Source: Macrostomum lignano (taxonomy: Eukaryota). From it: a stretch of DNA of 64,000 nucleotides. This document shows, in pieces, positions 12,440-58,377 of the stretch (within the stretch, counting starts at the first letter, position 1; the number at the start of each line of letters is the position of its first letter). Made by a program: the position numbers and the translations under genes. Under the pieces are notes generated by a model, which saw nothing but the letters and a program-made list of their open reading frames with translations, was not told where the DNA came from and did not search any database. The DNA is taken from assembly GCA_002269645.1 (NCBI GenBank), contig NIVC01001984.1, positions 1 to 64,000 on the forward strand, read 5' to 3'.

Positions 12440-14046
12440 TAGTGCCTGTCTGTCTATCTGTCTTAGTGCCTGTCTGTCTGTCTGTCTTAGGGCCTGTCTG
12501 TCTGTCTGTCTTAGGGCCTGTCTGTCTGTCTGTCTTAGGGCCTGTCTGTCTGTCTGCCTGATATGATATTTATTAATGCGTATCTACTCAAGTTCTAATT
12601 CCTTTTGGTTCTTCAGCATTTCAATAATAAAGCGATATTGTCTGCAACAGCTAATAAAATCGGTCGCACTCAAACAGGTGAACTTTCTCAGCTCAACCCA
12701 CCAGCCGACCCGCGAGGGCTCCGACGTGGACGCCAGCAGCATTGAGAACTCGTTTCGTCGTCTGGGCTTCGATGTTCGAACTTTTCGCGACCTGACAGCC
12801 TCGAATCTGCTGGATGTTCTGCGCGAGTTCCGCCTCAAAAATCATTCCAATAACGATTGTTTTGCTGTAGTGTTGCTGTCTCACGGATATGAGGGCCACT
12901 TCTACGCCAAGGACAGGGACTTGCCTATCGACTTTGTTGTTCGACAGTTCAAACCGGACGCTTGCAAAACTTTGGCTGGCAAGCCGAAGCTGTTCTTCAT
13001 CCAGGTATGTCTTCTGCTGGGATTCTGAGGTTAGGTTAGCTGGGATCTTGAAAATTTAAGCAATTTGTTTCTTAAATCTCAGAATGGGATTGGGGATCTC
13101 GGAATGGAATTGGGGCTCTCTGAATGGTATTGGGGATCTCAGAATGGGATTGGGGATCTCAGAATGGGATTGGGGATCTCAGAATGGGATTAGGAATCTC
13201 AAAATGGTTTTGGGGATCTCAGAATGGGATTGGGGATCTCAAAATGTGATTGGGGATCTCAGAATGGGATTAGGGATCTTAAAATGGGATTGGGATCTCT
13301 GAATGAGATTGGGGGTCTCAGAATGGGATTGGGATCTCAGAATGGGTTTGGTGATCTCAGAATGGGATTAGGAATCTCAGAATGGGATTAGGAATCTCAG
13401 AATGGGATTAGGGATCTCAGAATGGGATTAGGAATCTCAGAATGGGATTAGGAATCTCAGAATGGGATTAGGAATCTCAGAATGGGATTAGGAATCTCAG
13501 AATGGGATTGGGGATCTCAGAATGGGATTAGGGATCTCAGAATGGGATTGGTGATCTCAGAATGGGATTGGGGATCTCAGAATGGGATTGGGGATATTTA
13601 GGAAGGCTTTCATCATCCATCCCAATTAACGTCAGGCCTGCCGCGGTGACAACTTTGATCGAGGCGTTGAAGTCACCGACGGCGAAGACGACACCCTGGA
13701 CGCTCTGCCACCAGCTGGCGTTGGCGTCGGCAGCGGCGCTGGCATCAGCGGGCCGTTCCGAGTGCCGCTCGAGTCGGATTTCTTCTTCTTCTACTCGACC
13801 CCGCCCGGCTACTTCAGCTGGAGGAACAGCCACAGAGGCAGCTGGTTTGGGCAGCAGCTGACGGCTCTGCTGGATCGCCACGGTGACCGCATGGAGCTGC
13901 AGCATCTCATGCTGATGGTGCAACGCCTGGTGTCTTCGGCCTACGCCAGCGACACGGGAGACCCGAAGAGCACAGGGATGAAGCAGATGCCAGTGACTGT
14001 TAGCCAGCTTAGGAAACTGCTGTACTTCAGACCTAAGCAGCATTGA
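11991..14046 (+). CDS. Short-prodomain effector caspase (caspase-3/6/7-like), about 309 aa, 3 exons
   Basis: Exons 11991-12182, 12678-13004, 13636-14046. Motifs: RGFCLIFNH, VVLLSHG (catalytic His), GKPKLFFIQ|ACRG (catalytic QACRG split by intron 2), SDFFFFYSTPPGYFSWRN..GSWF. A further upstream exon cannot be excluded. Confidence 0.94.
12255..12560 (+). repeat. (TCTG)n microsatellite in caspase intron 1
   Basis: Direct reading. Confidence 0.95.
13081..13592 (+). repeat. 20-bp minisatellite in caspase intron 2
   Basis: Unit agaatgggattggggatctc. Confidence 0.93.
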
Positions 14047-24973: not shown

Positions 24974-26515
24974 TCACTCCATTTTCACTCCGCGAGCCGC
25001 CCATGCCGCCCGATTTCGTTGCACAATTCGTTGGAGAAGGTCGCGGAACGCCTTGTCAACGCCTTCGCCTGTGGCGGCCGAGGTCTCGTATAGATGCAGC
25101 TTGTGCTTGGCTGCTGCTTTGGCTGCGTCTGCAGGGGTCACCTGTGTGTGCGTTCAAATTTACTCTTGAGGTCTGAGATTCACTCCTAATTGGCAGGCCT
25201 AAGATTCACTCTATATTGTCAGGTCTGAGATTCACTCTTGATTGTCAGGTTGGAGATTCACTCTTAATTGTCAGGTCTGAGATTCACTCTTAATTGTCAG
25301 GTCTGAGATTCACTCTTGATTGTCAGGTCTGAGATTCACTCTTGATTGTCAGGTCGGAGATTCACTCTTAATTGTCAGGTCGGAGATTCACTCTTAATTG
25401 TCAGGTCTGAGATTCACTCTTGATTGTCAGGTCTGAGATTCACTCTTGATTGTCAGGTCTGAGATTCACTCTTAATTGTCAGGTCTGAGATTCACTTGAT
25501 TGTCAGGTCGGAGATTCACTCTTAATTGTCAGGTCTGAGATTCACTCTTGATTGTCAGGTCGGAGATTCACTCTTAATTGTCAGGTTGGAGATTCACTCT
25601 TAATTGTCAGGTCTGAGATTCACTCTTGATTGTCAGGTCTGAGATTCACTTGATTGTCAGGTCTGAGATTCACTCTTGTGAGGTATGAGGTTCACTCTTG
25701 GGAGATCTGAGATTCACTCTTGTGAGATCTGAGATTCACTCTTGTGACTTGTGAGGTCTGAGATTCACTCTTGATTGTCAGGTTTGAGATTCACTCTTGT
25801 GAGGTATGAGGTTCACTCTTGGGAGATCTGAGATTCACTCTTGTGAGATCTGAGATTCACTCTTGTGAGATCTGAGATTCACTCTTGTGAGATCTGAGAT
25901 TCACTCTTGTGAGATCTGAGATTCACTCTTGTGAGATCTGAGATTCACTCTTGTGAGATCTGAGATTCACTCATAATTGTTAGGTTTGAGATTCACTCTT
26001 GTCATGTCTGAATATTATTGATTTTGCCAGTTACGAGTATAAGAACAGCAGTGATTTATTACCTGTCTCTTATCCTTGAGATCTGCCTTATTAGCCAGAA
26101 GCACAATATCTGGCATCGAGCTCTGCTGCTGCTGCTGCTGCCCAGGACTCCCAAGGCAGCACTGAGCAATCTCTCTCATCCAAGCGTCAATATTAGCTAC
26201 AGATTTTGCTTCCGTGAGATCAATGGTCAGCAGCACTCCGTCGCAACCGGAGTAGAGCTCATTTCTCACCTCCAGGTACTCGGGATAACCGGACAGATCC
26301 CACATGTTCACCCTCAGATCGATGCCATCCACCCTGAACACCTTGAAGCCGTAGTCCGCTCCAACTGTTGGCTGGTAGCCTGCCGAAAACCGGCTGTCGC
26401 AGAAGTGCTTGATTAGGCAGGTTTTACCCGAGCCTGGAAATCCTGCGGAGACCAACTTAACCCATGCCAGACAGGTGGAAAAGTCTGGGATTGGGGTCTG
26501 TAACTGTTTGCTCAT
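24974..26515 (-). CDS. RJL/Rbj (DNAJC27-like) Rab-related small GTPase without a J domain, about 206 aa, 2 exons
   Basis: Exons 26515-26063 and 25141-24974. G1 GFPGSGKT, G2 YQPTVG, G3 WDLSGY, EVRNELY (RJL-like), G4 NKAD, G5 ETSA. Stop after ..AARGVKME, with no prenylation Cys. Confidence 0.8.
25165..26010 (+). repeat. Approx. 21-25-bp minisatellite filling the RJL intron
   Basis: Unit ctgagattcactcttgattgtcaggt, grading into ctgagattcactcttgtgagat. Confidence 0.92.
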
Positions 26516-27909: not shown

Positions 27910-28418
27910 ATTATGGGAAAATCAGATTGGGGATCTGGGAGAATCAGATTGAGGATCTGGGAAGATCAGATTGGGGATCCGAGGGAATTAGATTAGGGAG
28001 CTGGGGGAATCAGATTGGGGATCTGGGAGAATTAGATTGGGGATCTGAGAGAATCAGATTGGGGATCTGGGAGAATCAGATTGGGGATCTGGGAGAATCA
28101 GATTGGGGATCTGAGGGAATCAGATTGGGGAGCTGGGGAATTGGATTGGGGATCTGAGGGAATCAGATTGGGGATCTGGGAGAATTAGATTGGGGATCTG
28201 GGAGAATCAGATTGGGGATCTGAGGGAATCAGATTGGGTATCACGGAGAATCAGATTGGGGATCCGAGGGAATCAGATTGGGGATCTGAGAGAATCAGAT
28301 TGGGGATCTGGGAGAATCAGATTGGGGATCTGGGAGAATCAGATTGGGGATCTGGGAGAATCAGATTGGGGATCTGGGAGAATCAGATTGGGGAACTAGG
28401 TGAGTCAGATTGGGGATC
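27910..28418 (+). repeat. Approx. 23-bp minisatellite abutting the nAChR stop codon
   Basis: Unit ggggatctgggagaatcagatt. Confidence 0.92.
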
Positions 28419-28425
28419 AATTTAT

Positions 28426-31400
28426 TTATCCCTTAAACACATCCGGAGCAGAGAACAGAATCGCGCATGTCGAGATGATGGTGAAGCAGGAGAACAGGAT
28501 GAGGCAGAGTCTGTCCACCACTCTGGCCGCGAATTTCCACTCGCTGCTGACTTCTCCGTCCGCCACATCATCGGAGATTTTCTGCGTGACGATTCGAAGT
28601 TCGTGAACGATGGCGGCGAGCTCGGAACGCACGCTGCAGGGCGGCTGCTGCTGCTGAACCTCATCGTACACCGGTGGCGCCCTCGACGCAGCGGCCTGGG
28701 CAGCGGATGCTCGAAAATTGTCCTCCAGGTCCAGCACGTTCGCCAGCAGCGACTTTGAAGAGCGTTCGCGCAGCTCCATCGAGGCTGGCCCTGGGGAGGC
28801 GTGGCAGCATGAGATTATCCTCGACTCTCATGGTGAGATTATCCTCGACTCTCATGGTGAGATTATCCTCGACTCTCATGGTGAGATTATCCTCGATTCT
28901 TATAGTGAGATTATCATTGATTTTTATGGTGATATTATCTTTGGTTCTTTTGATGATATTCTGCTCGATTCTTATGGTGAGATTATCCCAGATCCTTATT
29001 ATGAGATTATCCTCGATTTTTTAATGAGATTATCCTTGATTCGTGTAGTGAGATTATCCTCGATTCTTATGGTGAGATTATCTCTGATTCTTCTGGTGAG
29101 ATTTTCCCTGATTCTTGTGAGATTATCTTTGATTCTTATGGTAAGATTATCAATGATCTCTATGATGAGACTATCCTTAATCATACATTATCCCAGACTC
29201 TTATGGTATGATAATTCGCTTTTCTTATGGTGAGATTATCCCTAATTCCTATGGTGAGATTATCCTTTGTTTAGATGAGATTATTCATTATTCTTATGGT
29301 GAGAATGTGTCGACTCGTATGGTGAGAATATCTCTGATTATCATGAGATTATTCCGCCTCTCCGATCCGATCTCCGCCCTCACCTCCCTGCTGCTGGTGG
29401 TGATCCGCCAGCAGCTCCCTGTGGTGCTCTGTGCCGAAGCCGGAGCCGGCGGATGCGCTGGCCCGGAAAGTGCCCAGTTTGCCTCCGCCGGTGGCGCCGC
29501 GAGTTCGGCGACGCCTCATCCGGATCGGCTCCGAGTCCGTGTCCCGGCGCATGCGGCGCATGCAAAGAATGCTGGCCAGGTAGGTGCAGATGAACTGGCG
29601 CACCTGGTTGCCATGGCGACGGGAGTTTTGGAGTTGTTAGTTTGTGTCGAAATCTTCTGTAGGCTATCGCTAAATCTATTGGAATGAGATTATCTGAATT
29701 CATATCATGAGATTATCGCTGAATCCATCCCAGGAGATTATGTCTAAATCCATCTCATGAGATTATTGCTGAATCCATCTCATGAGATTATCGCTAAATT
29801 CATATCATGAGATTATCGCTGAATCCATCTCATGAGATTATCTCTAAAACATTAGATAATCTATAGTATTTAAGAAGTCAAAATTCGCTTTAAACTCTTA
29901 CCCAATTAGGAATTGGATGCGATTCGGCATCTCTGTGATGGTAGTTGAGCACAATCACGGTGAACACCACTGATAGACTGCACATGATCATGGTGCAGGC
30001 AAAGTACCTGCCTGAAAGTTTACCAGAAAAAATTTCTACAACTTCTGAAAAAAATACTTAAAAAATTGATTGGAAAACAAAAATTGATTAGAAAAATCAT
30101 TGTTATCATAAATTACAATTAGACACAGAAATAGAAAGCGAAATCCTATAGTTTAACAATTAAGTGCTTTGCAGGACTTCTTTACTTAAGGTAACTCGTT
30201 TTAGGTAAATTTTTGTCTGGAGTAAATTTCTTGAGAAATCAATGCTAAAATAGATTTATCATTTTTCATAATTTCAATCAAAACTACATTGTAGCATTGT
30301 TAATGGATTTCATCTTTACCAAATTTAAGGCTTCTTAGCTGCTAAAGTGCAGCCTTGTATGTAGGATACAGCAAATTCAATTTTATCAAACGGATTTTTC
30401 AAAATTAAAGAAACTTACCTGTTTAACAAAATCGATACTGCTTTTATTAGGAAAAGAAAAATTTCATTTTCTTAATTGCGTTTTTATACTGTTATTAGAT
30501 TACTTTTTTATTATGTATAGGGCACCGAAAAGCGTGGATATCGTAAATTTTACCCGCCTACTACTTAGTAGTAAGTATAGTATCTCGCAGCTCACCTATC
30601 ACAGGCACAGAGTCTGACGTGGGCGGCATTGCCTCAGCAACCATCATTAGAAATACCGTTAGAGATAGAAGAATTGTGACACCTAAATAAAATTATCAAA
30701 TAATATTATAGCTACTGTATCAATACTGTTAGTAAGAATAATATAATTACAGTCTTATTGATTAATTTATTTTTACTTTTTTCTGAAGCAAGTCTCTTGG
30801 AAAGTTTGGATGGGCATTTTAAATTTGTCGATTGGAAATTATTGTTTAGTTTTAGTTTGAGAATCTGACAGACTGACGGACGCAAACTAAAATTTCAGAC
30901 CAAAATGAGAAATTGTGTAAACAAAAATAAAGTTTTAGTATAATCTATCTATACAGACCGTAGTGAATTCACACAAAAATTATTAAGAATCATGCCAAAA
31001 AACCGACGTACACAAAACGAAACAAATTTTCAATAGCATATTACCTGAATTATGCTACTAAAAGTAGGAAAAAAGCGCCCTCACCAATAAGCGGCAGCGC
31101 TTCCGAAGTTTGCGGCATTGCGTCAGCCACAAGCAGCAAAAACATGGTCAGGGAGAGCAGGATGGTGACGCCTGCGCCAAGTAAAATTCATAAATCATAT
31201 TTTACCGATCAGTTGCTTGTTAATAATGAGGTGTTAGAACCAAGTCTAACAGCTGTAACAGAATTCATCTAATGTTCGAATTCTGTCTAACAGCTGTACC
31301 AGAATTCATCTAATGTTCGAATTCTGTCTAACAGACTATCAATTTATCTAACATGTTCCTTCACTGTCTAACAGACTAACATAATTTATCTAACATGTCC

Positions 31401-34400
31401 CTTCACTGTCTAACAGACTAACATAATTTATCTAACATGTCCCTTCACTGTCTAACAGACTAACATAATTTATCTAACATGTCCCTTCACTGTCTAACAG
31501 ACTAACATAATTTATCTAACATGTTCCTTTACTGTCTAACAGACTAACATAATTTATCTAACATGTTCCTTCACTGTCTAACAGACTAACATAATTTATC
31601 TAACATGTTCCTTTACTGTATAACAGACTAACATAATTTATCTAACATGTTCCTTTACTGTCTAACAAACTAACATAATTTATCTAACATGTCCCTTCAC
31701 TGTCTAACAGACTAATTTATCTAACATGTTTCTTCAATGTCTAACAGACTAACATAATTTATCTAACACGTTCCTTCACTGTCTAACAGACTAACATAAT
31801 TTATCTAACATGTCCCTTCACTGTCTAACAGACTAACATAATTTATCTAACATGTTCCTTCACTGTCTAACAGACTAACATAATTTATCTAACATGTTCC
31901 TTCACTGTCTAACAGACTAACATAATTTATCTAACATGTTCCTTCACTGTCTAACAAACTAACATAATTTATCTAACATGTTCCTTCACTGTCTAACAGA
32001 CTAATTTATCTAACATGTTCCTTCCCTGTCTAAAAGACTTACATAATTTATCTAATATGTTCCATATCTGTCTAACAAAATGGATTTGTTACATAACAGG
32101 TCAGACTCGTGTGTCTAACAGATAAATTTTTCCTAAATCAATTTAGGATTATTAATTATTTAATTAGAGATTATTGCAGTGCTACTCTTATTCAGTAGGC
32201 TGGGCGCGTATGTGTGCATTTAAATGTTTTTTATCGTAAATTTATTGTGAAATTCCATAGATTGCGCAATATCAGTGTGTAGCAATATTTTGCGTGTTCA
32301 TGTATGAAAATGTTGCGCCAATCGGTTTGCGAGTTTAATACAGATGGCTGCTGCTCTTTTGCAAATGGAAATTTTCTAATAGCTCTGCGAGGTGCTTAGC
32401 ATAAGAAATCGAAGAAGCACTTAAAACTCGAATTTTTTTATAGAGTGGCCCTAACCTGAAAAATGTGATTTTTCAAGAATTCATTGCGCATTATTGGATC
32501 TTCTTTCTGAAATAGGTATGCAATTCCTTTCGACTTTCCCTGCATTTCCTTTTCATCTCCCTGCATTTCCCTTTGATCTCCCTGCATTTCCCTTTGATCT
32601 CCCTGCATTTCCCTTTGATCTCCCTGCATTCCCCTTCACTCTCCCTGCATTTCCCTTCACTCTCCCTGCATTTCCCTTCACTCTCCCTTCATTTCCCTTT
32701 GATCTCCCTGCATTTCCCTTTGATCTCCCTGCATTTCCCTTCACTCTCCCTGCATTTCCCTTCACTCTCCCTGCATTTCGCTTTGATCTCCCTGTATGTC
32801 CCTTTACTCTCCCTGCATTCTCTACATACAACTTCAAAAAAATAAACTTTAACTATGTCTAAATCATTCTGAAAGTTATAAATTTAAACCAATAAACAAA
32901 AAATTTAAACAAAAAACTCACCCAACGATATCTTCTCTCCTGCATCCGGTGGCAGCATGAAGGTGAGTAGCGCCATGGAGGAGATTAACACGCAGGGGAT
33001 TATGAGATTAAGCCCATAGTACAAAGTCCGTCGGCGGATGTTGATCCAGTACTTCAGATCGATGAACGGGAACGGGCAGCAGTCGTAAAGAAGAGCCGTT
33101 CTAACGCCAGGCATGCCTGACAAAACAGGTTAACATTTTCCGGCTTTGATTTTTGCGCGTTATTTACGAGCGCACATTTTCAATTAAAAATATGTAGTGA
33201 GTGCTCTTAAAGGTTTTAAGCGTGTTTGCCGGTTTATTAAGTACAAAATGAACTTTGCAATGCTTTTTACGCTAGGCGCTTAAAGTTGCATTTTGTGCGA
33301 GAATTGGTCGTCAATTTTAAGCAACGGTTAAACGATAACCTGAGATTCAGGAGACCTGAGATTCAGGAGACCTGAGATTCAGGAGACCTGAGATTCAGGA
33401 GACCTGAGATTCAGGAGACCTGAGATTCAGGAGACCTGAGATTCAGGAGACCTGAGATTCAGGAGACCTGAGATTCAGGAGACCTGAGATTCAGGAGACC
33501 TGAGATTCAGGAGACCTGAGATTCAGGAGACCTGAGATTCAGGAGACCTGAGATTTAGGAGACCTGAGATTCAGGAGACCTGAGATTCAGGAGATCTGAG
33601 ATTCAGGAGACCTGAGATTCAGGAGACCTGAGATTCAGGAGACCTGAGATTCAGGAGACCTGAGATTCAGGAGACCTGAGATTCAGGAGACCCAAGATTT
33701 TCCCATATTTTTCAGCCATCCGTCCTTTCCAAGAATCGCTAACCTATCAATCAATGCCACGTGACCTCAAAACGAAATTTTTGTTTTACCGAAGCTGACT
33801 TTTTCCCCAGCATCCGGCGGTATGATGAAGCTGAGCAGGGCTAGCGAGGACAGAAACGAACAGGGGCCAATTAAATTGAATACGTAATAAAGCTTGCGCC
33901 TGCGGATTAGCAGGTAGAATTTCAGATCGATATATGGATGGGGGCAGCAGTCGTATAGGATGCTGGTCCGCACTCCCGGTAAACCTGCGTGCAAGTTGGA
34001 CGAGTCAAAAATTTTTCTGGCTGGGCGAACATTAAAAAATGCCTGGATTTTTCGGCAATAAAACTGATTCTGAGATTTCAACACTTTGAGATTAAACCAA
34101 TTACCGATTATTCACTGCCGAATATGCAGTTCAATTAAATGATTATAACCATATTAAAGTCTGATAAAAGATCGTTGAACTAAGAAAATATTGTAAATGT
34201 GACATTTCATTCAACCAATGAATAGTCAGTCGGTCAATCAATCAATTAATCAATCAATCAAATCAATCAATCAATCAGATCTATCAATCAATCAGATCAA
34301 TCAATCAATCAGATCAATCAATCAATCAAATCAATCAATCAATCAGATCAATCAATCAATCAGATCAATCAATCAATCAGATCAATCAATCAATCAGATC

Positions 34401-37400
34401 AATCAATCAATCAGATCAATCAATCAATCAGATCAATCAATCAATCAGATCAATCAATCAATCAGATCTATCAATCAATCAGATCAATCAATCAAATAAA
34501 TCAATCAATCAGATCTATCAATCAATCAGATCAATCAATCAATCAGATCAATCAATCAATCAAATCAATCAATCAATCAGATCAATCAATCAATCAGATC
34601 AATCAATCAATCAGATCTATCAATCAATCAGATCAATCAATCAAATCAATCAATCAATCAGATCAATCAATCAATCAGATCAATCAATCAAACAGATCAA
34701 TCAATCAATCAGATCTATCAATCAATTAATGAATTAAATAACAAATCAATAAATTATCAAAGCGTACAATCAAACTACAAATTAATCAAGGGAAATAGCA
34801 TTCGCTGTCAATAGATTATTACAATCTTTCACAATCTCTATTGTGAATCTCTATTACAATCTTATCAAGTTTTGCATACCTTCCAGGTTCCACTCGCCAC
34901 TCTCAACATAAGTCGATATGTCGCCAGACCCTTTCTCCGAACAGTTTTTCGGGTCCTTCAGGATTTTCTCGGTCGTGTCCAGGTTGGGGTCGTCGCACTT
35001 GAACCGCAAATCCACGGTGCCCCCATCATAAGTCCAGGAGCCGAACTTCAACTCGCATTTCTGAGTATCGAACGGAAACCAGGTGATGTCAATTTTGCAG
35101 GTGGACTTGAACATGCCAGGCGGGATGTAGTTCATGCTGCCGTAGTGATTTATGACCACATTCGTCGGAAATGTGCCGTCGAACTTCTCGTCCGCGCTGG
35201 GAATCCAAGAGGGATAATTATCCTCTAATTATTCTTGCCTTCTGGCTCGTGAACTTTTAGAGCTGAAATATCGGATATATTCTGCAAAATCCAGAGATAC
35301 TCTTTATTATGCCTAATATCTCGTAGAGGTGCGATACCAACTCATCTCAGGGTGAAATTCTAATTGATTTCTAGGAATGAGATTCTCATTGATTTCTAAA
35401 AAGAAGATTCTAATTGATTTCTAGGAAAAATATTCGTATTGATTTCTAGGAAAAATATTCGTATTGATTTCTAGGAAAAATATTCGTATTGATTTCTAGG
35501 AAAAATATTCGTATTGATTTCTAGGAAAAATATTCGTATTGATTTCTAGGAAAAATATTCGTATTGATTTCTAGGAAAAATATTCGTATTGATTTCTAGG
35601 AAAAATATTCGTATTGATTTCTAGGAAAAATATTCGTATTGATTTCTAGGAAAAATATTCTAGCTCGTAATTGATTTCCAGGAATGACATTTTCTTTGAT
35701 TTCTAGGAATGAGATTCTAATTGATTTCTAGGAAAAAGATCCTAATTGATTTCTAGGAAAATAATTCTAATTGATTTCTAGGAAAATAATTCTAATTGAT
35801 TTCTAGGAAAAATATTCTCATTGATTTCTAAGAATGATTGGATTCTCATTGATGGCTAGGAAGATTCTATTTCATTTCTTGAAAAAATTCTTTTTGATTT
35901 CTAGGAAAAAGATTCTAATTGATTTCTAGGAAAAAGATCCTAATTTATTTCTAGGAAAATAATTCTAATTGATTTCTAGGAATGAGATTCTCATTGATTT
36001 CTAGGAATGAGATTCTCATTGATTTCTAGGAATGAGATTCTCATTGATTTCTAGGAAAAAGATCCTAATTTATTTCTAGGAAAATAATTCTAATTGATTT
36101 CTAGGAATGAGATTCTCATTGATTTCTAGGAAAAAGATCCTAATTGATTTCTAGGAAAATAATTCTAATTGATTTCTAGGAAAATAATTCTAATTGATTT
36201 CTAGGAAAATAATTCTAATTGATTTCTAGGAAAATAATTCTAATTGATTTCTAGGAAAAAGATTCTAATTGATTTCTAGGAAAATAATTCTAATTGATTT
36301 CTAGGAAAAAATATTCTCATTGATTTCTAAGAATGAGATTCTCATTGATGGCTAGGAAGATTCTATTTCATTTCTTAAAAAAATTCTCTTTGATTTCTAG
36401 GAAAAAGATTCTCATTGATTTATTGGTATGAGATTCTATTTAATTTATAGGAATCAGATTCTCTTTGATTTCTAGCGATGCGATTCTCATTTATTTGTAG
36501 AAAAAATTCTTCTTAATTTCTTAAAAAGGTTCTAACTGATTTTTTGTAAAAGGATTTTAATTGATTTCTAGGAATAAGATTCTATTTGATTTCTAGGAAT
36601 GAGATTCTCATTTATTTCTAGGAAAAGGCTTCTCATTGATTTCTAGGGATGACATTTACGTCAACTTCTATGCATGATATTTTAACTAGCTGTTCCAAAA
36701 AATCACAATTTGACAAAAAAGCTGTCAGATAAACCAACCTGTTGTACAACAAAATGTCGGGTTTCCACACCTTGCTTGGGTCGATGTTAATCTTGGTGAT
36801 GTTCCCGTAGTCTGCTGGGTCCCACATGAAGTGATAATCGCTCCAAGTCTGAATGGAAATAAGTTTGTTTTGTTATAATAAATATTGCAACACGCGTTGA
36901 CGGTTTAAATTGGTGCCATTTTTCCGACAGTACGCTCGTATTTAACAAGTTTTAAAACGATGTTGGTCTATTTGTCTGTATTTGTGTGTCCCAGTGTCTG
37001 TCTGGATGTGTCTCAGTATTTGTCTGGATGTGTCTCAGTGTCTGTCTGGGTGTGTCTCAGTGTCTGTCTGGGTGTGTCTCAGTGTCTGTCTGGGTGTGTC
37101 TCAGTGTCTGTCTGGGTGTGTCTTAGTGTCTGTCTGGATGTGTCTTAGTGTCTGTCTGGATGTGTCAGTGTCTGTCTGGGTGTGTCTCAGTGTCTGTCTG
37201 GGTGTGTCTCAGTGTCTGTCTGGATATGTCTCCGTCTGTCTGGATATGTCTCGTCTGTCTGGATGTGTCTCAGTATCTGTCTGGATATGTCTCAGTGTCT
37301 GTCTGGATATGTCTCCGTCTGTCTGGATATGTCTCCGTCTGTCTGGATGTGTCTCAGTATCTGTCTGGATATGTCTCAGTGTCTGTCTGGGTGTGTCTCA

Positions 37401-40400
37401 GTATCTGTCTGGATATGTCTCAGTGTCTGTCTGGGTGTGTCTCAGTGTCTGTCTGGGTTGTCTCAGTGTCTGTCTGAATGTGTTTCAGTCTTTCTGGGCG
37501 TGTTTTCAGTTCAAAAGTATCGACTATTTCCAAGCCAAAAGTGGCAAGCCAATAAATCACTTTACTGATTAATTATTTAATACCGCCAATAAACTGCATA
37601 TTAAAAGATAACAAAGTCCAAGTTGCTCAAATAAAATTTTCTCCACTTACCAGGTCGAGCCAAATGTTTGAGAATAGAATCTGATTCTTCTCGTCCTGAG
37701 GATGTGCAAAAATGGGTTTTGGGTTGAATTGGGCACTAGATATGAGATCTAGAGATGATAATTGAGATCTGGAGATTATAATTGAGATGTAGAGATGATA
37801 ATTGAGATCTAGAGATGGTTATTGAGATCTAGAGATGATAATTGAGATCTAGAGATGAATATTGAGATCTAGAGATGATAATTGAGATCTAGAGATGATT
37901 ATTGAGATCTAGAGATGATAATTGAGATCTAGAGATGATAATTGAGATCTAGAGATGATAATTGAGATCTAGAGATGATTATTGAGATCTAGAGATGATT
38001 ATTGAGATCTAGAGATGATTATTGAGATCTAGAGATGATTATTGAGATCTAGAGATGATAATTGAGATCTAGAGATGATTTTTGAGATCTAGAGATGATT
38101 ATTGATATCTAGAGATGATTATTGAGATCTAGAGATGATAATTGAGATCTAGAGATGATAATTCAGATCTAGAGATGATAATTGAGATCTAGAGATGATA
38201 ATTGAGATCTAGAGATGATAATTGAGATCTAGAGGTGATGTTAACTGAGTTCTAGAGATGAGATTTGAGATTTGAGACTTCGAGATGAGATCTGTGATCT
38301 ACACTGTAGAGAGATGAGATTTAATAACTAAAAAATGAGATCTGTGATCTAAAAATGAGAACTGAGATCAAAAGAAGAAATCTGTGATTTAAAGATGAGA
38401 TCTGAAATCTTTGCAATATTTTTTAACGATTTGACAGTTTATAACTCAGGAGCATAAGCAGTAGGCTATAAATTATTAAAGAAGTCTCATAGCCATAAAA
38501 ACTCCGTCGGAAATAACTCAAACAAGTTCTTGAGCTAAATAATGCTAGTTCAATGAGTCCTTTGCTGCCTGACTCTGAGAACAGCTGCACACAGCTGGCG
38601 GGGTCATGTGAGCAGGCGCTTAGGCCGGTCAGTCAGCGGATTGAGTTCAGTCACCCGCATCAGATTGAGCTGGGCTGCACTTGCTTTGGTTTTGCTGCAA
38701 TTTCTATGGAGATCTTTTTTGTATTGGTTAAAAGCAGCTGGTCATGTCGGCTCTGGAACTGGCAGAGGGCTTTGCTGTTATTCTGCTGCAGTTTTTTAGA
38801 TACTGGTGCTGGCGTCCCCGGTGCTGGCTCCCCCGGTGCTGGCGTCCCCGGTGCTGGCTCCCCCTGTGCTGGCGCCCCCTGTGCTGGCTCCCCCGGTGCT
38901 GTCTCCCCCGGTGCTGGCGCCCCCGGTGCTGGCGCCCCCGGTGCTGGCGCCCCCGGTGCTGGCGCCCCCGGTGCTGGCGCCCCCGGTGTTGGCGCCCCCA
39001 GTTCTGGCGCCCCCGGTGCTGGCGCCCCCGGTGCTGGCGCCCCCGGTGCTGGCGCCCCTAGTGCTAAAGTCCCTAGTGCTAAAGCCTCTGGTGCTAAAGC
39101 CCCTGGTGCTCCCAATCGGGCTGTTGGTACATCATGAAAGATCAAGGCTCACACAGGGTGTACAGCGGCTTCGGCTATGCTAATTCAAAAGCCCTTGCTC
39201 AACTGCAAGCCCGTCAATACGCACCACATCAATGATCTGCTGCAGGGACACTTTGAACCAGACGTACAGGACTGCTGAGTCATTCTGTACGGGCCGCTCC
39301 ATGGGGTTGTGCCGCAGGCTCTCGTTCTTGTTGTCGAACAGATCTCGCAACAGCCGCTTCTCGTGATGGCCCGCCTCCACTGCTGGGCGTCCGGTTCGAA
39401 AATTGAAAGTTGAGAGCCATTTTCATAGTAAAAAATATTTGAATTTTTCGATACTGTAGTTCCGATTGAAGTTCAGGTGGAGTTCAGGTGGAGTTCAGTT
39501 GGAGTTCAGGTGGAGTTCAGGTGGAGTTCAGGTGGAGTTCAGGTGGAGTTCAGGTGGAGTTCAGGTGGAGTTCAGTTGAAGTTTAGGTGGAGTTCAGTTG
39601 AAGCTCAGGTGGAGTTCAGTTGAAGTTCATGTAGAGTTCAGGTGGAGTTCAGATGCAGTTCAGGTGCATTTCATGCAGTTTCATAATCAAAGAATCCCCA
39701 AAACTCGCACAAAACATTTGCAGGGAATTCTGTCTGAATTGACAAATTCCGAAGTAGCCAGTGAATGATGCAAATATTTTTAGCCATTATATTCACTTAA
39801 TCTTCAAGCAGATAGATGAACTGCAGAGTCTTAATGGATAACTTTGCGAGATATGCGAGAACCTATTCAGGTACAGCTTCGGGTGACCCCTCCCTTCAAC
39901 CTATCCCTTACCTAGCTGTTGGCCAGTTCTAAGATCCCCATTTTTTGGATCGATTACGGAGATCCCGGAGCCCAACCTGCTCTGACTGTGTGTTGTCAGG
40001 GCTGCTGCTAATCCTCTTGTGAAAAAATCCATACAGCCAACCCACCACTCTTCTCGGAAAACTGTCAATCTAAGCATTCTCTTACCTTAGTAGTTCGTAA
40101 TAATATAAGCTCAGCATAGAAGCTGTTAAAAGATCAGACTGCATCTGAGTCTGAGCAGCCGGTGTTCACCGATTCCGCTTGGAGCTTTGGGAGTCTCTGT
40201 TTACCAGCGGTGAGAAGGTAATTATGGGGGATTTCTCGACTACTGATGCTGGGAATTCAGTCAGTGGGGAATTTCTCGACTACTGATGCTGGGAATTCAG
40301 TCAGTGGGGAATTTCTAGTCTACTGATGCTGGGAATTCAGTCAGTGGGGAATTTCTCGTCTACTGATGCTGGGAATTCAGTCAGTGGGGAATTTCTCGAC

Positions 40401-56412: not shown

Positions 56413-58377
56413 ATGGCATCAAGGAGCAAACGAAGAAGAGCGGATGATTTCCTAATGACTAGGTTTCTCCGGGACGATGTCGGCTATGGCAAAGCAATGC
56501 CTGAAGCTAGCCCTGTAGAAGTTGATGTCACGGAGGAGCCGACAGAAACTGCTGAAGTTGAGGAAGAAGAAGCTGGCTTTGATGAGCTTCGGTCGTTGAG
56601 CAGCACTGACGATGAAGAGGAAGAGAAACCCCAGGATATTCGCTCAACAGAGAAGAAACTGCTGGACTTGCTGGTCAGTTTCTTCACCATCTTTGGCTAT
56701 TCCAGACCAGCGGCTATTTTCCTACTGGCCGGACTTCGTGCGATTGATTTGCCAGCACCTAACTATAAAACAGTCGAGCGAATTCTGAAAGAAGATCAAC
56801 CCACTGGAAAGACAACTCCAATGGGCAATGGACACTTCCGGTATGTGTCGATTCTTGATAACCTGCAGTTGCTGCTCAGCCAAGGTCTGCTGCGACTGAT
56901 GCCCGAGAATGAGCACCGTGATGATCAAAGTTCCACTCCTAAAGTGTTTAAGTTCGAAGGAATCGTCAATTGCGATGGTTTACCACTCTACCATTCGAGT
57001 GGATTCGGACTGTGGCCTATTTTAATGAAAATTCCTGGCGCATTCGCAAAGCCTTTTCCGGTGGGAGTTTGGGCCGGCGTTGGAAAACCTCCACTTTTGC
57101 CCTACCTTCAAGAATTTTGCCAAGAGGCCACAAAATTTCTTTCTGGTCCTGTCACAATTAGTAAAGACGTCTCCATTACTCTATCAACAATTTATTTCGT
57201 TTGCGACGCCCCCGCCCGAGCATTTTTAATGGCAACCTTGAATCACAACTCCTATCATGGCTGCAGCTATTGCCGAGCGGTAGGGCCTCGTGTTGCAAAC
57301 CGTGTGACTTATGCACTGACGGCTGGAGAAAGCCGCTGCGGAAAGATCTATCGCGCAGGGATGGAGAGGAACCAGGAAACAAAAAGCAGGATTCGTTCTC
57401 CGCTACTGGATTTGCCGAGCATAGATTTTGTCACGTCTTTTCCTCTTGATTATCAGCATGCTGTTTGTCTTGGTGTTGTTCGCAAGCTAATGAACTTATA
57501 CTTTGGCAAAGGACCAGCCGGTGAATGCAAGCTTAATCCGACACAGTTGCGCCGAATGTCGGATAAGATCACTTTGGTTGCTTCGTGGACACCGTCAGAG
57601 TTTCAGAGACGGCCTCGGCGAATTGATATAAACTTACAGTACATGAAAGCAACAGAATTTCGCCAATTTTTACTTTATTTGGGACCGATTCTGTTTCGAG
57701 GCTTCGTGCAGGAAAAATATATTAATCATTTCTTGCTTCTGCACTTTGCTCTATATGTCTACTCTGATAGGCGGCTGATCGACTTGTATGACCACGCTAA
57801 AAAATGTATTGAAGAATTCGTATTAAAAACAGCGGAACTTTTTGGACAGCAGTCCGTTAGTTATAACATTCATGCTTTGCTTCATTTAGATCAGTTCGTG
57901 CGGCAACACGCAGATATTAATTACTTCTCAACGTTTGCATTTGAAAACTATCTGGGTGCAGTGAAGCGAAGCATTAAAGTCACAAGGCACCTTGCAGCCC
58001 ATTGCGTCCAACAAGTTTTTAAGGTGAGAAAGCAAACGCTGCTTCAAAACCACAGCATTCCGGCACTAAGATACCGGCCGACAGCAAGTGACAACTGCTG
58101 TTTTGTCGATGAAACCTGCAATACGTGCGTCTACATCGACAGCCTTTCAGCAAGTGGACTAGTTTCTGGCAGGATTCTTCTTCCCGAGAGTGACGTTTAC
58201 TCGTACCCATACGAATCCCTCACGCTTGGAATTGGGATTTACCGCCTTACATCGATTGTCACTAGTGGTGTGCCGCAACGCAAATGCTGGATTTGGCCTT
58301 CAAAAAATCTGGATACCGAAGCAACTGACGCAGAAAGTCGTTTCCACGTTGTGCCTCTAACGGGCGACAGGGATTAG
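56413..58377 (+). CDS. CMC/EnSpm-type DDE transposase, 654 aa, uninterrupted ORF
   Basis: Motifs NCDGLPLYHSS..LWPIL, GKP, FVCDAPARAFL, HNSYHGCSYC, PLDYQHAVCLGVVRKL, EFQRRPR, KATEFRQFLLY, YNIHALLHL, FAFENYLG. Confidence 0.93.
   Translation: MASRSKRRRADDFLMTRFLRDDVGYGKAMPEASPVEVDVTEEPTETAEVEEEEAGFDELRSLSSTDDEEEEKPQDIRSTEKKLLDLLVSFFTIFGYSRPAAIFLLAGLRAIDLPAPNYKTVERILKEDQPTGKTTPMGNGHFRYVSILDNLQLLLSQGLLRLMPENEHRDDQSSTPKVFKFEGIVNCDGLPLYHSSGFGLWPILMKIPGAFAKPFPVGVWAGVGKPPLLPYLQEFCQEATKFLSGPVTISKDVSITLSTIYFVCDAPARAFLMATLNHNSYHGCSYCRAVGPRVANRVTYALTAGESRCGKIYRAGMERNQETKSRIRSPLLDLPSIDFVTSFPLDYQHAVCLGVVRKLMNLYFGKGPAGECKLNPTQLRRMSDKITLVASWTPSEFQRRPRRIDINLQYMKATEFRQFLLYLGPILFRGFVQEKYINHFLLLHFALYVYSDRRLIDLYDHAKKCIEEFVLKTAELFGQQSVSYNIHALLHLDQFVRQHADINYFSTFAFENYLGAVKRSIKVTRHLAAHCVQQVFKVRKQTLLQNHSIPALRYRPTASDNCCFVDETCNTCVYIDSLSASGLVSGRILLPESDVYSYPYESLTLGIGIYRLTSIVTSGVPQRKCWIWPSKNLDTEATDAESRFHVVPLTGDRD

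What the first reader, a model, noticed from the sequence alone, without database searches (positions are those of the whole stretch)
32922..33984. Tandem-duplicated loop C + TM1 exon pair in an alpha7-like nAChR: a splice switch on the agonist site
Seen: two intact 195-nt, phase 1-1 exons (33984-33790 and 33116-32922) encode the same segment, each with its own acceptor and donor and no stop. 7a has canonical loop C (YDCCPHPY) but a diverged TM1 ([20 protein letters not shown]). 7b has an alpha7-like TM1 ([20 protein letters not shown]), but its second loop-C aromatic is Phe (YDCCPFPF). Established: the two loop-C tyrosines belong to the aromatic agonist box, and insect alpha6 has mutually exclusive exons 3 and 8. 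I do not recall a loop C/TM1 pair in any nAChR. Inference: including both would break the topology, so they are mutually exclusive and give subunits with different ligand pharmacology.
Basis: partly seen in the sequence, partly recalled or inferred. Interest (0 to 1): 0.88.

Follow-up and report, generated by a model that had tools for sequence, protein, structure and literature searches.

The report
Alternative TM1 exons in flatworm nAChR
A flatworm (Macrostomum lignano) alpha7-like acetylcholine-receptor gene carries two interchangeable copies of the exon for loop C plus the first membrane helix, an old pair shared with ribbon worms and annelids, and its conserved difference lies in the channel helices rather than the agonist site.

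Summary
Exons 7a (33984-33790) and 7b (33116-32922) are intact 195-nt, phase 1-1 exons of one minus-strand alpha7-like nAChR gene. The window is from Macrostomum lignano or a very close relative.

The 7a/7b pair is old and under selection:
- A paralogous locus keeps all four exons, with dN/dS of 0.15 for 7a and 0.08 for 7b.
- The same order (7a-type first) occurs in Capitella, Owenia, a TARA Oceans contig and the nemertean Lineus longissimus.
- In Lineus, equal-length RefSeq isoforms use one copy or the other.
- An RNA-seq-based GenBank model at the paralog skips 7a and 8b.

Mutually exclusive use is therefore well supported, though no reads were examined for this gene.

The "agonist-site switch" reading is not supported as the conserved function. 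The Tyr/Phe difference is peculiar to this gene copy. The three positions that always separate 7a from 7b lie at the start of TM1 and the start of TM2.

Paralogs hard-wired as 7b+8a, and apparently 7a+8b, suggest coordinated choice. So does a candidate intron-intron RNA stem. This is only a lead.

No paper describing an exon-7 pair was found.

The parts
34880..35196 (-). Constitutive exon 5/6 (fused; Cys-loop, loops B and F); its donor at 34880 feeds either exon 7 copy
   Evidence: AG/GT, 317 nt, ends in phase 1
33790..33984 (-). Exon 7a: loop C + pre-M1 + TM1 + M1-M2 loop + first 3 residues of TM2; derived type (RRRK, YYV, ...GEKVSF)
   Evidence: dN/dS 0.15 against the paralog copy; groups with the 7a-type of Lineus, Capitella, Owenia and TARA
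33338..33692 (-). 16-nt satellite (about 22 copies) filling half of the 673-nt intron between 7a and 7b
32922..33116 (-). Exon 7b: same segment, ancestral alpha7-like type (RRRT, YYG, ...GEKISL)
   Evidence: 73-75% identical to the 7b-type or single exon 7 of annelids and nemerteans; 62% to human alpha7
31085..31171 (-). Exon 8a: TM2, derived type (13' Met, 20' Asp: [28 protein letters not shown])
   Evidence: dN/dS 0.05 against paralog copies
30596..30682 (-). Exon 8b: TM2, ancestral type ([28 protein letters not shown])
   Evidence: dN/dS 0.06; closest to the single exon 8 of Capitella and L003
29902..30011 (-). Constitutive exon 9 (TM3), acceptor for either exon 8
33716..33735 (-). Candidate 5' arm of a long-range intronic RNA stem, 54 nt downstream of the 7a donor (UUCUUGGAAAGGACGGAUGG). 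A lead, not established
   Evidence: (I2)
30794..30813 (-). Candidate 3' arm, 111 nt upstream of the 8b acceptor (CCAUCCAAACUUUCCAAGAG). A lead, not established
   Evidence: (I2)

Best explanation
The window holds an alpha7-like nicotinic receptor subunit gene of Macrostomum lignano. It has two adjacent clusters of tandem-duplicated alternative exons: 7a/7b (loop C, pre-M1, TM1, M1-M2 loop, first turn of TM2) and 8a/8b (rest of TM2). One copy from each cluster is spliced into a given mRNA. The subunits produced share the same ligand-binding core and cytoplasmic loop but have different TM1 and TM2 helices. 7b and 8b are the ancestral, alpha7-like versions; 7a and 8a are derived. The 7a/7b pair arose before flatworms, annelids and nemerteans diverged and has been kept by selection. 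Its conserved effect is on the membrane part of the subunit, through the start of TM1, one face of TM1, and the cytoplasmic end of TM2. That would alter gating or desensitisation, pore properties, or subunit packing and assembly. In this particular gene copy the two exons also differ in loop C (PHPY versus PFPF), which may add a modest change in agonist potency. Shown: anatomy, homology, selection, conservation of the pair and its order, and alternative use in annotated isoforms of an orthologous gene and of a paralog. Inferred: mutually exclusive use in this gene and the functional consequence.
For: Anatomy and open reading frame. Identity of the gene: Pfam Neur_chan_LBD and Neur_chan_memb; best solved relative is human alpha7 at E = 9e-134, against 1e-90 for alpha4, beta2 and alpha3. 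Organism: UniProt M. lignano models P0122, P0378 and P0379 are identical to the window in most exons. Selection: window versus paralog locus L006 gives dN/dS of 0.15 (7a), 0.08 (7b), 0.05 (8a) and 0.06 (8b) at dS of 0.9-2.1; all splice sites and lengths are kept. Deep conservation: a 7a-type exon followed by a 7b-type exon, each 195 nt, occurs in Capitella (L005), a TARA contig (L001) and Lineus (L008); back-to-back copies occur in the Owenia model. Three diagnostic residues are shared by all 7a-type copies, and a neighbour-joining tree puts them in one clade. Alternative use: Lineus isoforms X1-X6 are all 480 aa and differ by whole-exon substitution of exons 3, 4 and 7. GenBank model P0132 at L006 uses 7b+8a and skips the intact 7a and 8b; that annotation is built from RNA-seq assemblies (PMC5730564). 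General rule: tandem-duplicated exons are nearly always spliced in a mutually exclusive way (stated in PMC1919356). Insect alpha6 has such exons 3 and 8 (PMC6393475 abstract; PMC2064938).
Against: No RNA reads or cDNA of this gene were available, and no transcript containing 7a was seen for any M. lignano gene in an RNA-based annotation. The only 7a-containing M. lignano models (P0129, P0374) come from a pipeline that elsewhere reads through both copies. RefSeq isoforms of Lineus are computed models whose read support I could not inspect. Bootstrap support for a single origin of all 7a-type exons is low (24%) because the exon is short. Both exon lengths are multiples of three, so no frame-based mechanism enforces exclusivity, and no enforcing element was demonstrated. 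The functional effect is inferred from residue positions only.
Confidence: 0.8

Rival explanations
1. One reading: the pair is mainly a switch on the agonist-binding site, giving subunits with different ligand pharmacology through the loop-C Tyr/Phe difference.
For: The exon does encode loop C, and in this gene copy the copies differ there (YDCCPHPY versus YDCCPFPF). A Tyr-to-Phe change in the YxCC motif of alpha7 lowers ACh affinity about tenfold according to PMC2064938, though that concerns the first Tyr.
Against: The difference is not conserved. Other M. lignano paralogs have Phe in both copies, and an allele has PLPY. Annelid, TARA and Lineus copies have Tyr in both. No loop-C position separates the 7a-type from the 7b-type; the three that do lie in pre-M1/TM1 and TM2. 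Phe keeps the aromatic ring (my knowledge: the second loop-C Tyr tolerates Phe with small effects in muscle and alpha7 receptors).
Confidence: 0.12
2. Exon 7a is a decaying pseudo-exon, a duplicate no longer spliced in, and 7b is constitutive.
For: RNA-based GenBank models of M. lignano paralogs all use 7b (P0124, P0132, P0139). One paralog (L004) has no 7a at all. The 7a donor GTAAAA is further from consensus than the 7b donor GTGAGT.
Against: dN/dS is 0.15 over dS of 1.2 between paralog copies. There is no stop or indel, and length, phase and AG/GT are kept in at least two independent loci and four paralogous proteins. A 7a-type exon persists in three phyla and is used in Lineus isoforms X3 and X6. 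The transcript assembler used for GenBank dropped minor isoforms (isoform-frac 0.75), so the absence of 7a there says little.
Confidence: 0.04
3. Both copies are included together, as in the UniProt M. lignano models and many arthropod RefSeq models, giving a subunit with two loop C/TM1 units.
For: Gene models P0122, P0123 and P0126 (M. lignano), P0135 (Capitella), P0142 (Owenia) and many arthropod models contain both copies in tandem, and the reading frame stays open.
Against: An extra transmembrane helix would invert TM2-TM4 and put the C-terminus on the wrong side (established topology of Cys-loop receptors). The RNA-based model at L006 skips 7a and 8b. Lineus isoforms have constant length. 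Read-through of in-frame tandem exons is a common behaviour of ab initio gene predictors (my knowledge).
Confidence: 0.03
4. Variant of the best explanation: the two clusters are not chosen independently but as matched pairs, 7a with 8b and 7b with 8a. An intronic RNA stem between the intron after 7a and the intron before 8b loops out 7b and 8a.
For: Paralog L004 has only 7b and 8a in its genome. Two allelic models of another paralog (P0129, P0374) contain 7a+8b only, from a pipeline that otherwise includes every copy. The RNA-based model at L006 is 7b+8a. In L006 the strongest complementarity among all ten intron pairs joins a site 26 nt after the 7a donor to a site 68 nt before the 8b acceptor: a 13-bp perfect stem plus 6 bp, with 1 of 400 dinucleotide shuffles as good. 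The window's best match for the same intron pair lies at the equivalent places, 54 nt and 111 nt.
Against: The window's stem is not significant alone (86 of 400 shuffles reach it). A duplex-energy test on 150-nt splice-site-proximal pieces does not single the pair out. L007 is a 99.65% copy of L006 and adds nothing. Introns of the paralogs share no alignable sequence. The genomic content of the 7a+8b paralog could not be read. In insects all combinations of alpha6 exons 3 and 8 are found (PMC2064938).
Confidence: 0.25

Closest known systems
Insect nAChR alpha6 (Dalpha6 and orthologs): mutually exclusive exons 3a/3b and 8a/8b/8c
   Same: Same gene family (alpha7-like group), same principle, and exon 8 is the homologous 87-nt TM2 exon. 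Tandem copies have equal length and phase and are spliced one at a time (PMC2064938, PMC1919356, PMC6393475).
   Different: No exon-7 (loop C/TM1) alternatives are described for insect alpha6 in the papers read. This gene has no exon-3 pair in the window. The flatworm exon 8 pair need not share its origin with the insect one; this was not tested.
Lineus longissimus (nemertean) alpha7-like gene, RefSeq isoforms X1-X6 (XP_064652926 and others)
   Same: Same exon pair in the same order, 7a-type (RRRKLYFLANL...[14 protein letters not shown]) upstream of 7b-type. Isoforms of identical length use one or the other.
   Different: Lineus also has alternative exons 3 and 4 but a single exon 8. Both of its exon 7 copies keep Tyr-Tyr in loop C. 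These are computed models, not published cDNAs.
Capitella teleta CAPTEDRAFT_221893 and Owenia fusiformis CAH1797308 (annelids)
   Same: A 7a-type exon is followed by a 7b-type exon, 195 nt each in Capitella, and the 7a signature residues are shared.
   Different: The public models wrongly include both copies. Capitella also has two exon 3 copies and one exon 8.
Pancrustacean alpha7 genes with two tandem exon 7 copies (termites, locusts, planthopper, lobster, prawn, barnacle, woodlouse)
   Same: The homologous loop C/TM1 exon is duplicated in tandem. Zootermopsis X1 and X2 differ by exactly 65 residues.
   Different: Here the first copy is the canonical one and the second is divergent (RRRTLFYTVNLIVPCVMISS...). 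The copies lack the spiralian 7a signature and fall inside the arthropod clade in the tree, so the duplication is probably independent. Most RefSeq models seen include both copies.
Human CHRNA7
   Same: Best solved relative. Exon sizes 45, 110, 195, 87 and 110 nt for exons 3, 4, 7, 8 and 9 match what I recall for CHRNA7. 7b is 62% identical to the human exon 7 peptide.
   Different: The vertebrate gene has single exons 7 and 8. Exons 5 and 6 are fused here, and there is a 23-residue insertion in loop F.

Membership tests
Cys-loop nicotinic receptor, alpha-type subunit of the alpha7-like group | Neurotransmitter-gated ion-channel ligand-binding and transmembrane domains | tested here: met
   Pfam PF02931 at E = 2e-63 and PF02932 at E = 8e-50
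Cys-loop nicotinic receptor, alpha-type subunit of the alpha7-like group | Cys-loop (two Cys 13 residues apart) and vicinal Cys pair in loop C (YxCC) | tested here: met
   [15 protein letters not shown] in exon 5/6; YDCC in both 7a and 7b
Cys-loop nicotinic receptor, alpha-type subunit of the alpha7-like group | Closer to alpha7 than to other nAChR subunits | tested here: met
   PDB search: human alpha7 at E = 9e-134, next alpha4/beta2/alpha3 at about 1e-90. Named hits are alpha7, acr-16 and insect alpha6
Cys-loop nicotinic receptor, alpha-type subunit of the alpha7-like group | Forms ACh-gated cation channels (homomeric for alpha7) | not testable with these tools
   Only the GEK motif (-1' Glu, typical of cation-selective members) is seen, in both exon 7 copies
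Tandem-duplicated, mutually exclusive exon cluster | Adjacent homologous exons of equal length and equal phase, each with its own splice sites | tested here: met
   195/195 nt and 87/87 nt, phase 1-1, AG/GT throughout, E = 7e-29 between the exon 7 copies
Tandem-duplicated, mutually exclusive exon cluster | Both copies kept by purifying selection | tested here: met
   dN/dS of 0.05-0.15 between paralogous loci; conservation across three phyla
Tandem-duplicated, mutually exclusive exon cluster | Exactly one copy per mature mRNA; both copies used in some transcripts | tested here: inconclusive
   Shown only indirectly: the RNA-based model at paralog L006 uses 7b+8a, and Lineus isoforms substitute the exon. 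No reads for this gene, and no RNA-derived 7a transcript in M. lignano.
Tandem-duplicated, mutually exclusive exon cluster | A mechanism that prevents joint inclusion (competing RNA structures, steric hindrance, incompatible spliceosomes, or frame shift with NMD) | tested here: inconclusive
   Frame shift excluded (both lengths are multiples of 3). Steric hindrance excluded (introns of 673 and 402 nt). All sites are GT-AG. One candidate long-range stem, significant in L006 only.

The most novel reading that the evidence does not exclude
The two neighbouring clusters work as one nested switch. A long-range RNA stem between the intron after 7a and the intron before 8b loops out 7b and 8a. The gene then makes two matched TM1/TM2 combinations (7a+8b or 7b+8a) rather than four. 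After gene duplication, separate paralogs were hard-wired to one combination each. This would be a coordinated choice between two mutually exclusive exon clusters that swaps a co-adapted pair of pore-forming helices.
Probability: 0.25. Interest if true: 0.75.

Novelty: new variant of a known kind. Interest (0 to 1): 0.55.

Why it matters
Mutually exclusive exons in nicotinic receptors are known mainly from insect alpha6 (loop D and TM2) and alpha4, where they matter for receptor diversity and insecticide resistance.

This finding adds a third site, the loop C/TM1 exon. The pair is not a flatworm oddity. It is shared by at least three spiralian phyla, and a probably independent duplication of the same exon exists in crustaceans and hemimetabolous insects.

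It points to TM1, together with TM2, as a part of alpha7-like subunits that animals repeatedly vary by splicing. It gives three diagnostic residues to test by mutagenesis.

It also flags a systematic annotation error. Many public models (UniProt M. lignano, Capitella, Owenia, and perhaps many arthropod RefSeq entries) include both copies and so describe proteins with an impossible topology.

Tried and rejected
1. A protein-database search with 7a alone gave a single hit. The word index is too coarse for a 64-residue divergent exon. The exhaustive representative search and a full-length profile were needed.

2. Intron conservation between the window and paralog L006 was sought with blastn at word size 7. 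Only exons align, so no conserved docking or selector element could be read off.

3. The generic inverted-repeat scan of 29900-34900 gave 14 pairs, mostly AT-rich and at about chance level. Only pair I2 was kept as a lead.

4. RNA duplexfold on whole introns gives meaningless global pairings, because satellites dominate (one search timed out).

5. The duplex-energy z-score test on 150-nt donor-proximal and acceptor-proximal pieces did not single out any pair in both loci.

6. The locus of the 7a+8b paralog (P0129) is not on record. Whether it truly lacks 7b and 8a could not be checked.

7. L007 turned out to be a 99.65% identical duplicate of L006 and is not independent evidence.

8. Nine literature searches found no description of alternative exon 7 in an nAChR. 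Bombyx alpha8 'exon 7' alternatives encode TM2-TM3, which is a different segment. Drosophila Dalpha5 isoform A merely lacks its exon 7, which encodes part of TM2.

9. Assembly artefact was rejected. The copies are only 61.5% identical, and the arrangement recurs in other loci and phyla.

10. Exon 1 (signal peptide) was not located.
Full report
**1. What is in the sequence**

On the minus strand, 33984-33790 and 33116-32922 are two 195-nt open segments. Each is preceded by AG and followed by GT, and each is read as 2 bases + 64 codons + 1 base.
- The two copies are 61.5% identical in DNA and share 42 of 64 residues.
- tblastn of one against the other gives E = 7e-29.

I aligned human alpha7, written from memory, to the window and read the splice sites. 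This gave a complete minus-strand gene from exon 2 to the stop codon:

| Exon | Coordinates |
|---|---|
| 2 | 39382-39225 |
| 3 | 37695-37651 |
| 4 | 36848-36739 |
| 5/6 (fused) | 35196-34880 |
| 7a | 33984-33790 |
| 7b | 33116-32922 |
| 8a | 31171-31085 |
| 8b | 30682-30596 |
| 9 | 30011-29902 |
| 10 | 29603-29384 |
| 11 | 28790-28426 (TAA, followed by AATAAA) |

- Every exon has AG/GT.
- The frame is open with any one exon 7 and any one exon 8.
- The 87-nt TM2 exon is also present twice (66.7% DNA identity, 19 of 28 residues).
- No other exon has a second copy in the window.
- Exon 1 was not found.

**2. What gene and what organism**

The product has the two Pfam domains of Cys-loop receptors. 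It is much closer to human alpha7 (E = 9e-134) than to any other solved nAChR subunit (about 1e-90).

A profile search returned Macrostomum lignano proteins at the top. UniProt models P0122, P0378 and P0379 are identical to the window through most exons. P0378 and P0379 differ by one residue in 7b; P0122 also differs by one residue in 7a. The window is therefore M. lignano, or a very close relative, and probably another allele or duplicated copy.

Those UniProt models read straight through 7a, 7b and 8a. That would give a subunit with an extra membrane helix and is an annotation error.

**3. Is 7a a live exon?**

M. lignano has several paralogs of this gene.
- Locus L006 (GenBank NIVC01002951) carries 7a, 7b, 8a and 8b in the same order, with the same lengths and with AG/GT.
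- Between the window and L006, synonymous sites are near saturation (dS 0.9-2.1).
- dN/dS is 0.15 for 7a, 0.08 for 7b, 0.05 for 8a and 0.06 for 8b.

A pseudo-exon would not behave this way. Two further paralogs known only as proteins (P0123, P0129) also have intact 7a-type segments.

**4. How old is the pair?**

The one database hit to 7a alone led to a TARA Oceans scaffold, L001. After the end of exon 6 it carries a 7a-type exon (…[15 protein letters not shown]…GEKVTC) and then a 7b-type exon. Both are 195 nt with AG/GT.

The same arrangement is found elsewhere:
- Capitella teleta (L005).
- The Owenia fusiformis protein model.
- The nemertean Lineus longissimus (L008), with the 7a-type exon ending at 75889 and the 7b-type at 76676-76873.

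Three alignment positions separate every 7a-type copy from every 7b-type or single-copy exon:
- The residue after RRR is K/Q/R in 7a-type and T/V in 7b-type.
- The residue after YY is V/I/L in 7a-type and G/A in 7b-type.
- The last residue, TM2 position 3', is F/C/M in 7a-type and L in 7b-type.

A neighbour-joining tree puts all spiralian 7a copies in one clade and all 7b copies with the single-copy exons of other animals. Bootstrap support is only 24%, as expected for 63 residues. Order in the gene, exon length and shared derived residues together make a single duplication the most economical reading. It would predate the split of flatworms, annelids and nemerteans.

7b is the ancestral form. 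It is nearly the same as the single exon 7 of nemertean, chelicerate and myriapod genes and is 62% identical to the human one.

**5. Is the use mutually exclusive?**

The evidence is direct for relatives and indirect for this gene.
- Lineus RefSeq isoforms X1, X2, X3, X4 and X6 are all 480 residues. They differ by whole-exon substitutions of exons 3, 4 and 7. X3 and X6 carry the 7a-type exon and the others the 7b-type.
- In M. lignano, the GenBank model P0132 at L006 joins exon 6 to 7b, 7b to 8a and 8a to exon 9, skipping the intact 7a and 8b.
- The GenBank annotation was built from StringTie/TACO assemblies of RNA-seq plus a de novo transcriptome. The isoform-fraction filter of 0.75 removes minor isoforms (PMC5730564).

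So the copies are not always co-included, and the absence of a 7a transcript there is uninformative. The literature rule is that nearly all tandem-duplicated exons are spliced mutually exclusively (PMC1919356).

What enforces exclusivity is open:
- Both lengths are multiples of three, so joint inclusion would not shift the frame.
- The introns between the copies are 673 and 402 nt, too long for steric hindrance.
- All splice sites are GT-AG.

**6. What does the switch change?**

- An allele has PLPY.
- The other paralogs have Phe at the second aromatic in both copies: 7a is PHPF or TYPF, and 7b is PYPF or PFPF.
- Annelids and Lineus have Tyr in both copies.

The loop-C difference is therefore lineage-specific noise, or at most a local refinement. 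It is not what selection has held apart for hundreds of millions of years.

The constant differences sit where the extracellular domain meets TM1 (RRR-K/T) and in the first turn of TM1 (YY-V/G). In Macrostomum 7a, further changes follow down TM1 (NLIIPCVLI becomes NLIGPCSFL). The last constant difference is at the cytoplasmic end of TM2 (GEKISL becomes GEKVSF).

Exon 8a changes pore-facing or ring positions of TM2 relative to 8b (13' Val to Met, 20' Glu to Asp). This matches the known insect alpha6 exon 8 variants, which also alter TM2 (PMC2064938).

The best-supported reading is a switch on the channel, gating or assembly part of the subunit. A possible minor pharmacological side effect may exist in this gene copy. 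This is inference from position; no function was measured.

**7. A lead: coordinated choice**

- Paralog L004 has only 7b and 8a in its genome.
- Two allelic models of another paralog have 7a+8b only. They come from the same pipeline that elsewhere includes every copy.
- The RNA-based model at L006 is 7b+8a.

This pattern is what one expects if the ancestral gene made 7a+8b and 7b+8a, and duplicates later fixed one each.

An inverted repeat in the window (I2) pairs a site 54 nt after the 7a donor with a site 111 nt before the 8b acceptor. It consists of 10 bp, a 3x3 loop and 6 bp.

I tested the same idea in L006:
- The best complementarity among all ten intron pairs is again between these two introns, 26 nt after the 7a donor and 68 nt before the 8b acceptor.
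- It has a perfect 13-bp stem plus 6 bp. Only 1 of 400 dinucleotide shuffles does as well.

Weaknesses:
- The window's stem alone is not significant (86 of 400 shuffles).
- An energy-based test does not single the pair out.
- L007 is a near-identical copy of L006.
- The paralogs' introns do not align.

I rate the nested-switch model at about one in four.

**8. Comparison with what is known**

Known mutually exclusive exons in nAChR genes:

| Gene | Alternative exons | Source |
|---|---|---|
| Insect alpha6 | 3 and 8 | |
| Insect alpha4 | 4 | |
| Lepidopteran alpha8 | their 'exon 7', which encodes TM2-TM3 | |

None of the papers found describes alternatives for the loop C/TM1 exon. This is a limited library, so it is not proof of absence.

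In sequence databases the feature is present but unremarked. It appears correctly in Lineus RefSeq isoforms and wrongly as tandem inclusion in many other models.

Pancrustacean alpha7 genes also have two tandem exon 7 copies. There the divergent copy is the second one, it lacks the spiralian signature, and it groups with arthropod sequences. That is probably a separate duplication of the same exon.

**9. Verdict**

- The mutual-exclusion inference is well supported but still needs reads.
- The agonist-site emphasis is not supported as the conserved function.
- The finding is a new variant of a known kind and of moderate interest. It would be of higher interest if the coordinated 7a+8b / 7b+8a switch proves real.

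Noticed in passing
window 28000-39700: Almost every intron of this gene holds its own satellite array, with units of 11 to 42 nt and up to about 50 copies. Examples are the 16-nt unit at 33338-33692, the 42-nt unit at 31324-32077 and the 25-nt unit at 35357-36647. This fits the reported 15% simple/tandem-repeat content of the M. lignano genome (PMC5730564).
   Followed up: partly
window 34890-34990 (exon 5/6, loop F): There is a 23-residue insertion relative to human alpha7 ([26 protein letters not shown]). Its two cysteines are conserved in all M. lignano paralogs (KCSNESL...RCSE, KCANESL...RCTE), which may mean an extra disulfide in loop F. Capitella, the TARA contig and L003 lack it.
   Followed up: no
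L005 5311-5355 and 5614-5658; L008 61458-61505, 61606-61653, 68550-68666, 68712-68819; L007 19732-19773 and 21528-21572: Other exons of orthologous or paralogous genes are duplicated as well: exon 3 (loop D) in Capitella, Lineus and one M. lignano paralog, and exon 4 in Lineus. Lineus RefSeq isoforms use them alternatively. The window's gene has single exons 3 and 4.
   Followed up: partly
P0134, P0138, P0143, P0145, P0146, P0150, P0160, P0243, P0246 (arthropod proteins): Alpha7 genes of termites, locusts, stick insects, a planthopper, decapods, a barnacle and a woodlouse have two tandem loop C/TM1 exons. Most RefSeq/GenBank models seen include both, which is topologically implausible. Zootermopsis X1 and X2 differ by exactly 65 residues. 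Dipteran and lepidopteran alpha7 sequences seen have one copy.
   Followed up: partly
P0122, P0123, P0126, P0128 (UniProt M. lignano); P0135 (Capitella); P0142 (Owenia): Public protein models read through both exon 7 copies, and often both exon 8 copies. This produces subunits with duplicated TM1/TM2, which is probably mis-annotation of alternative exons.
   Followed up: yes
L006 2843/2844: Exon 6 of the paralog appears to use a GC donor (AAG|gcaagt), while the window's exon 6 uses GT.
   Followed up: no
window 26015-26515 (-), 12576-13028 (+), 56413-58377 (+): Other coding pieces lie in the window: an ORF with a Ras-family small GTPase domain (Pfam E = 1e-23), an ORF with a caspase domain (E = 1e-30), and a 654-residue ORF with no Pfam match, which may belong to a mobile element.
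   Followed up: partly
P0242 (ENA contig, 205 kb): In one unidentified marine species the intron between the 7a-type and 7b-type exons is only about 75 nt and is open in frame, so a single ORF spans both copies.
   Followed up: no
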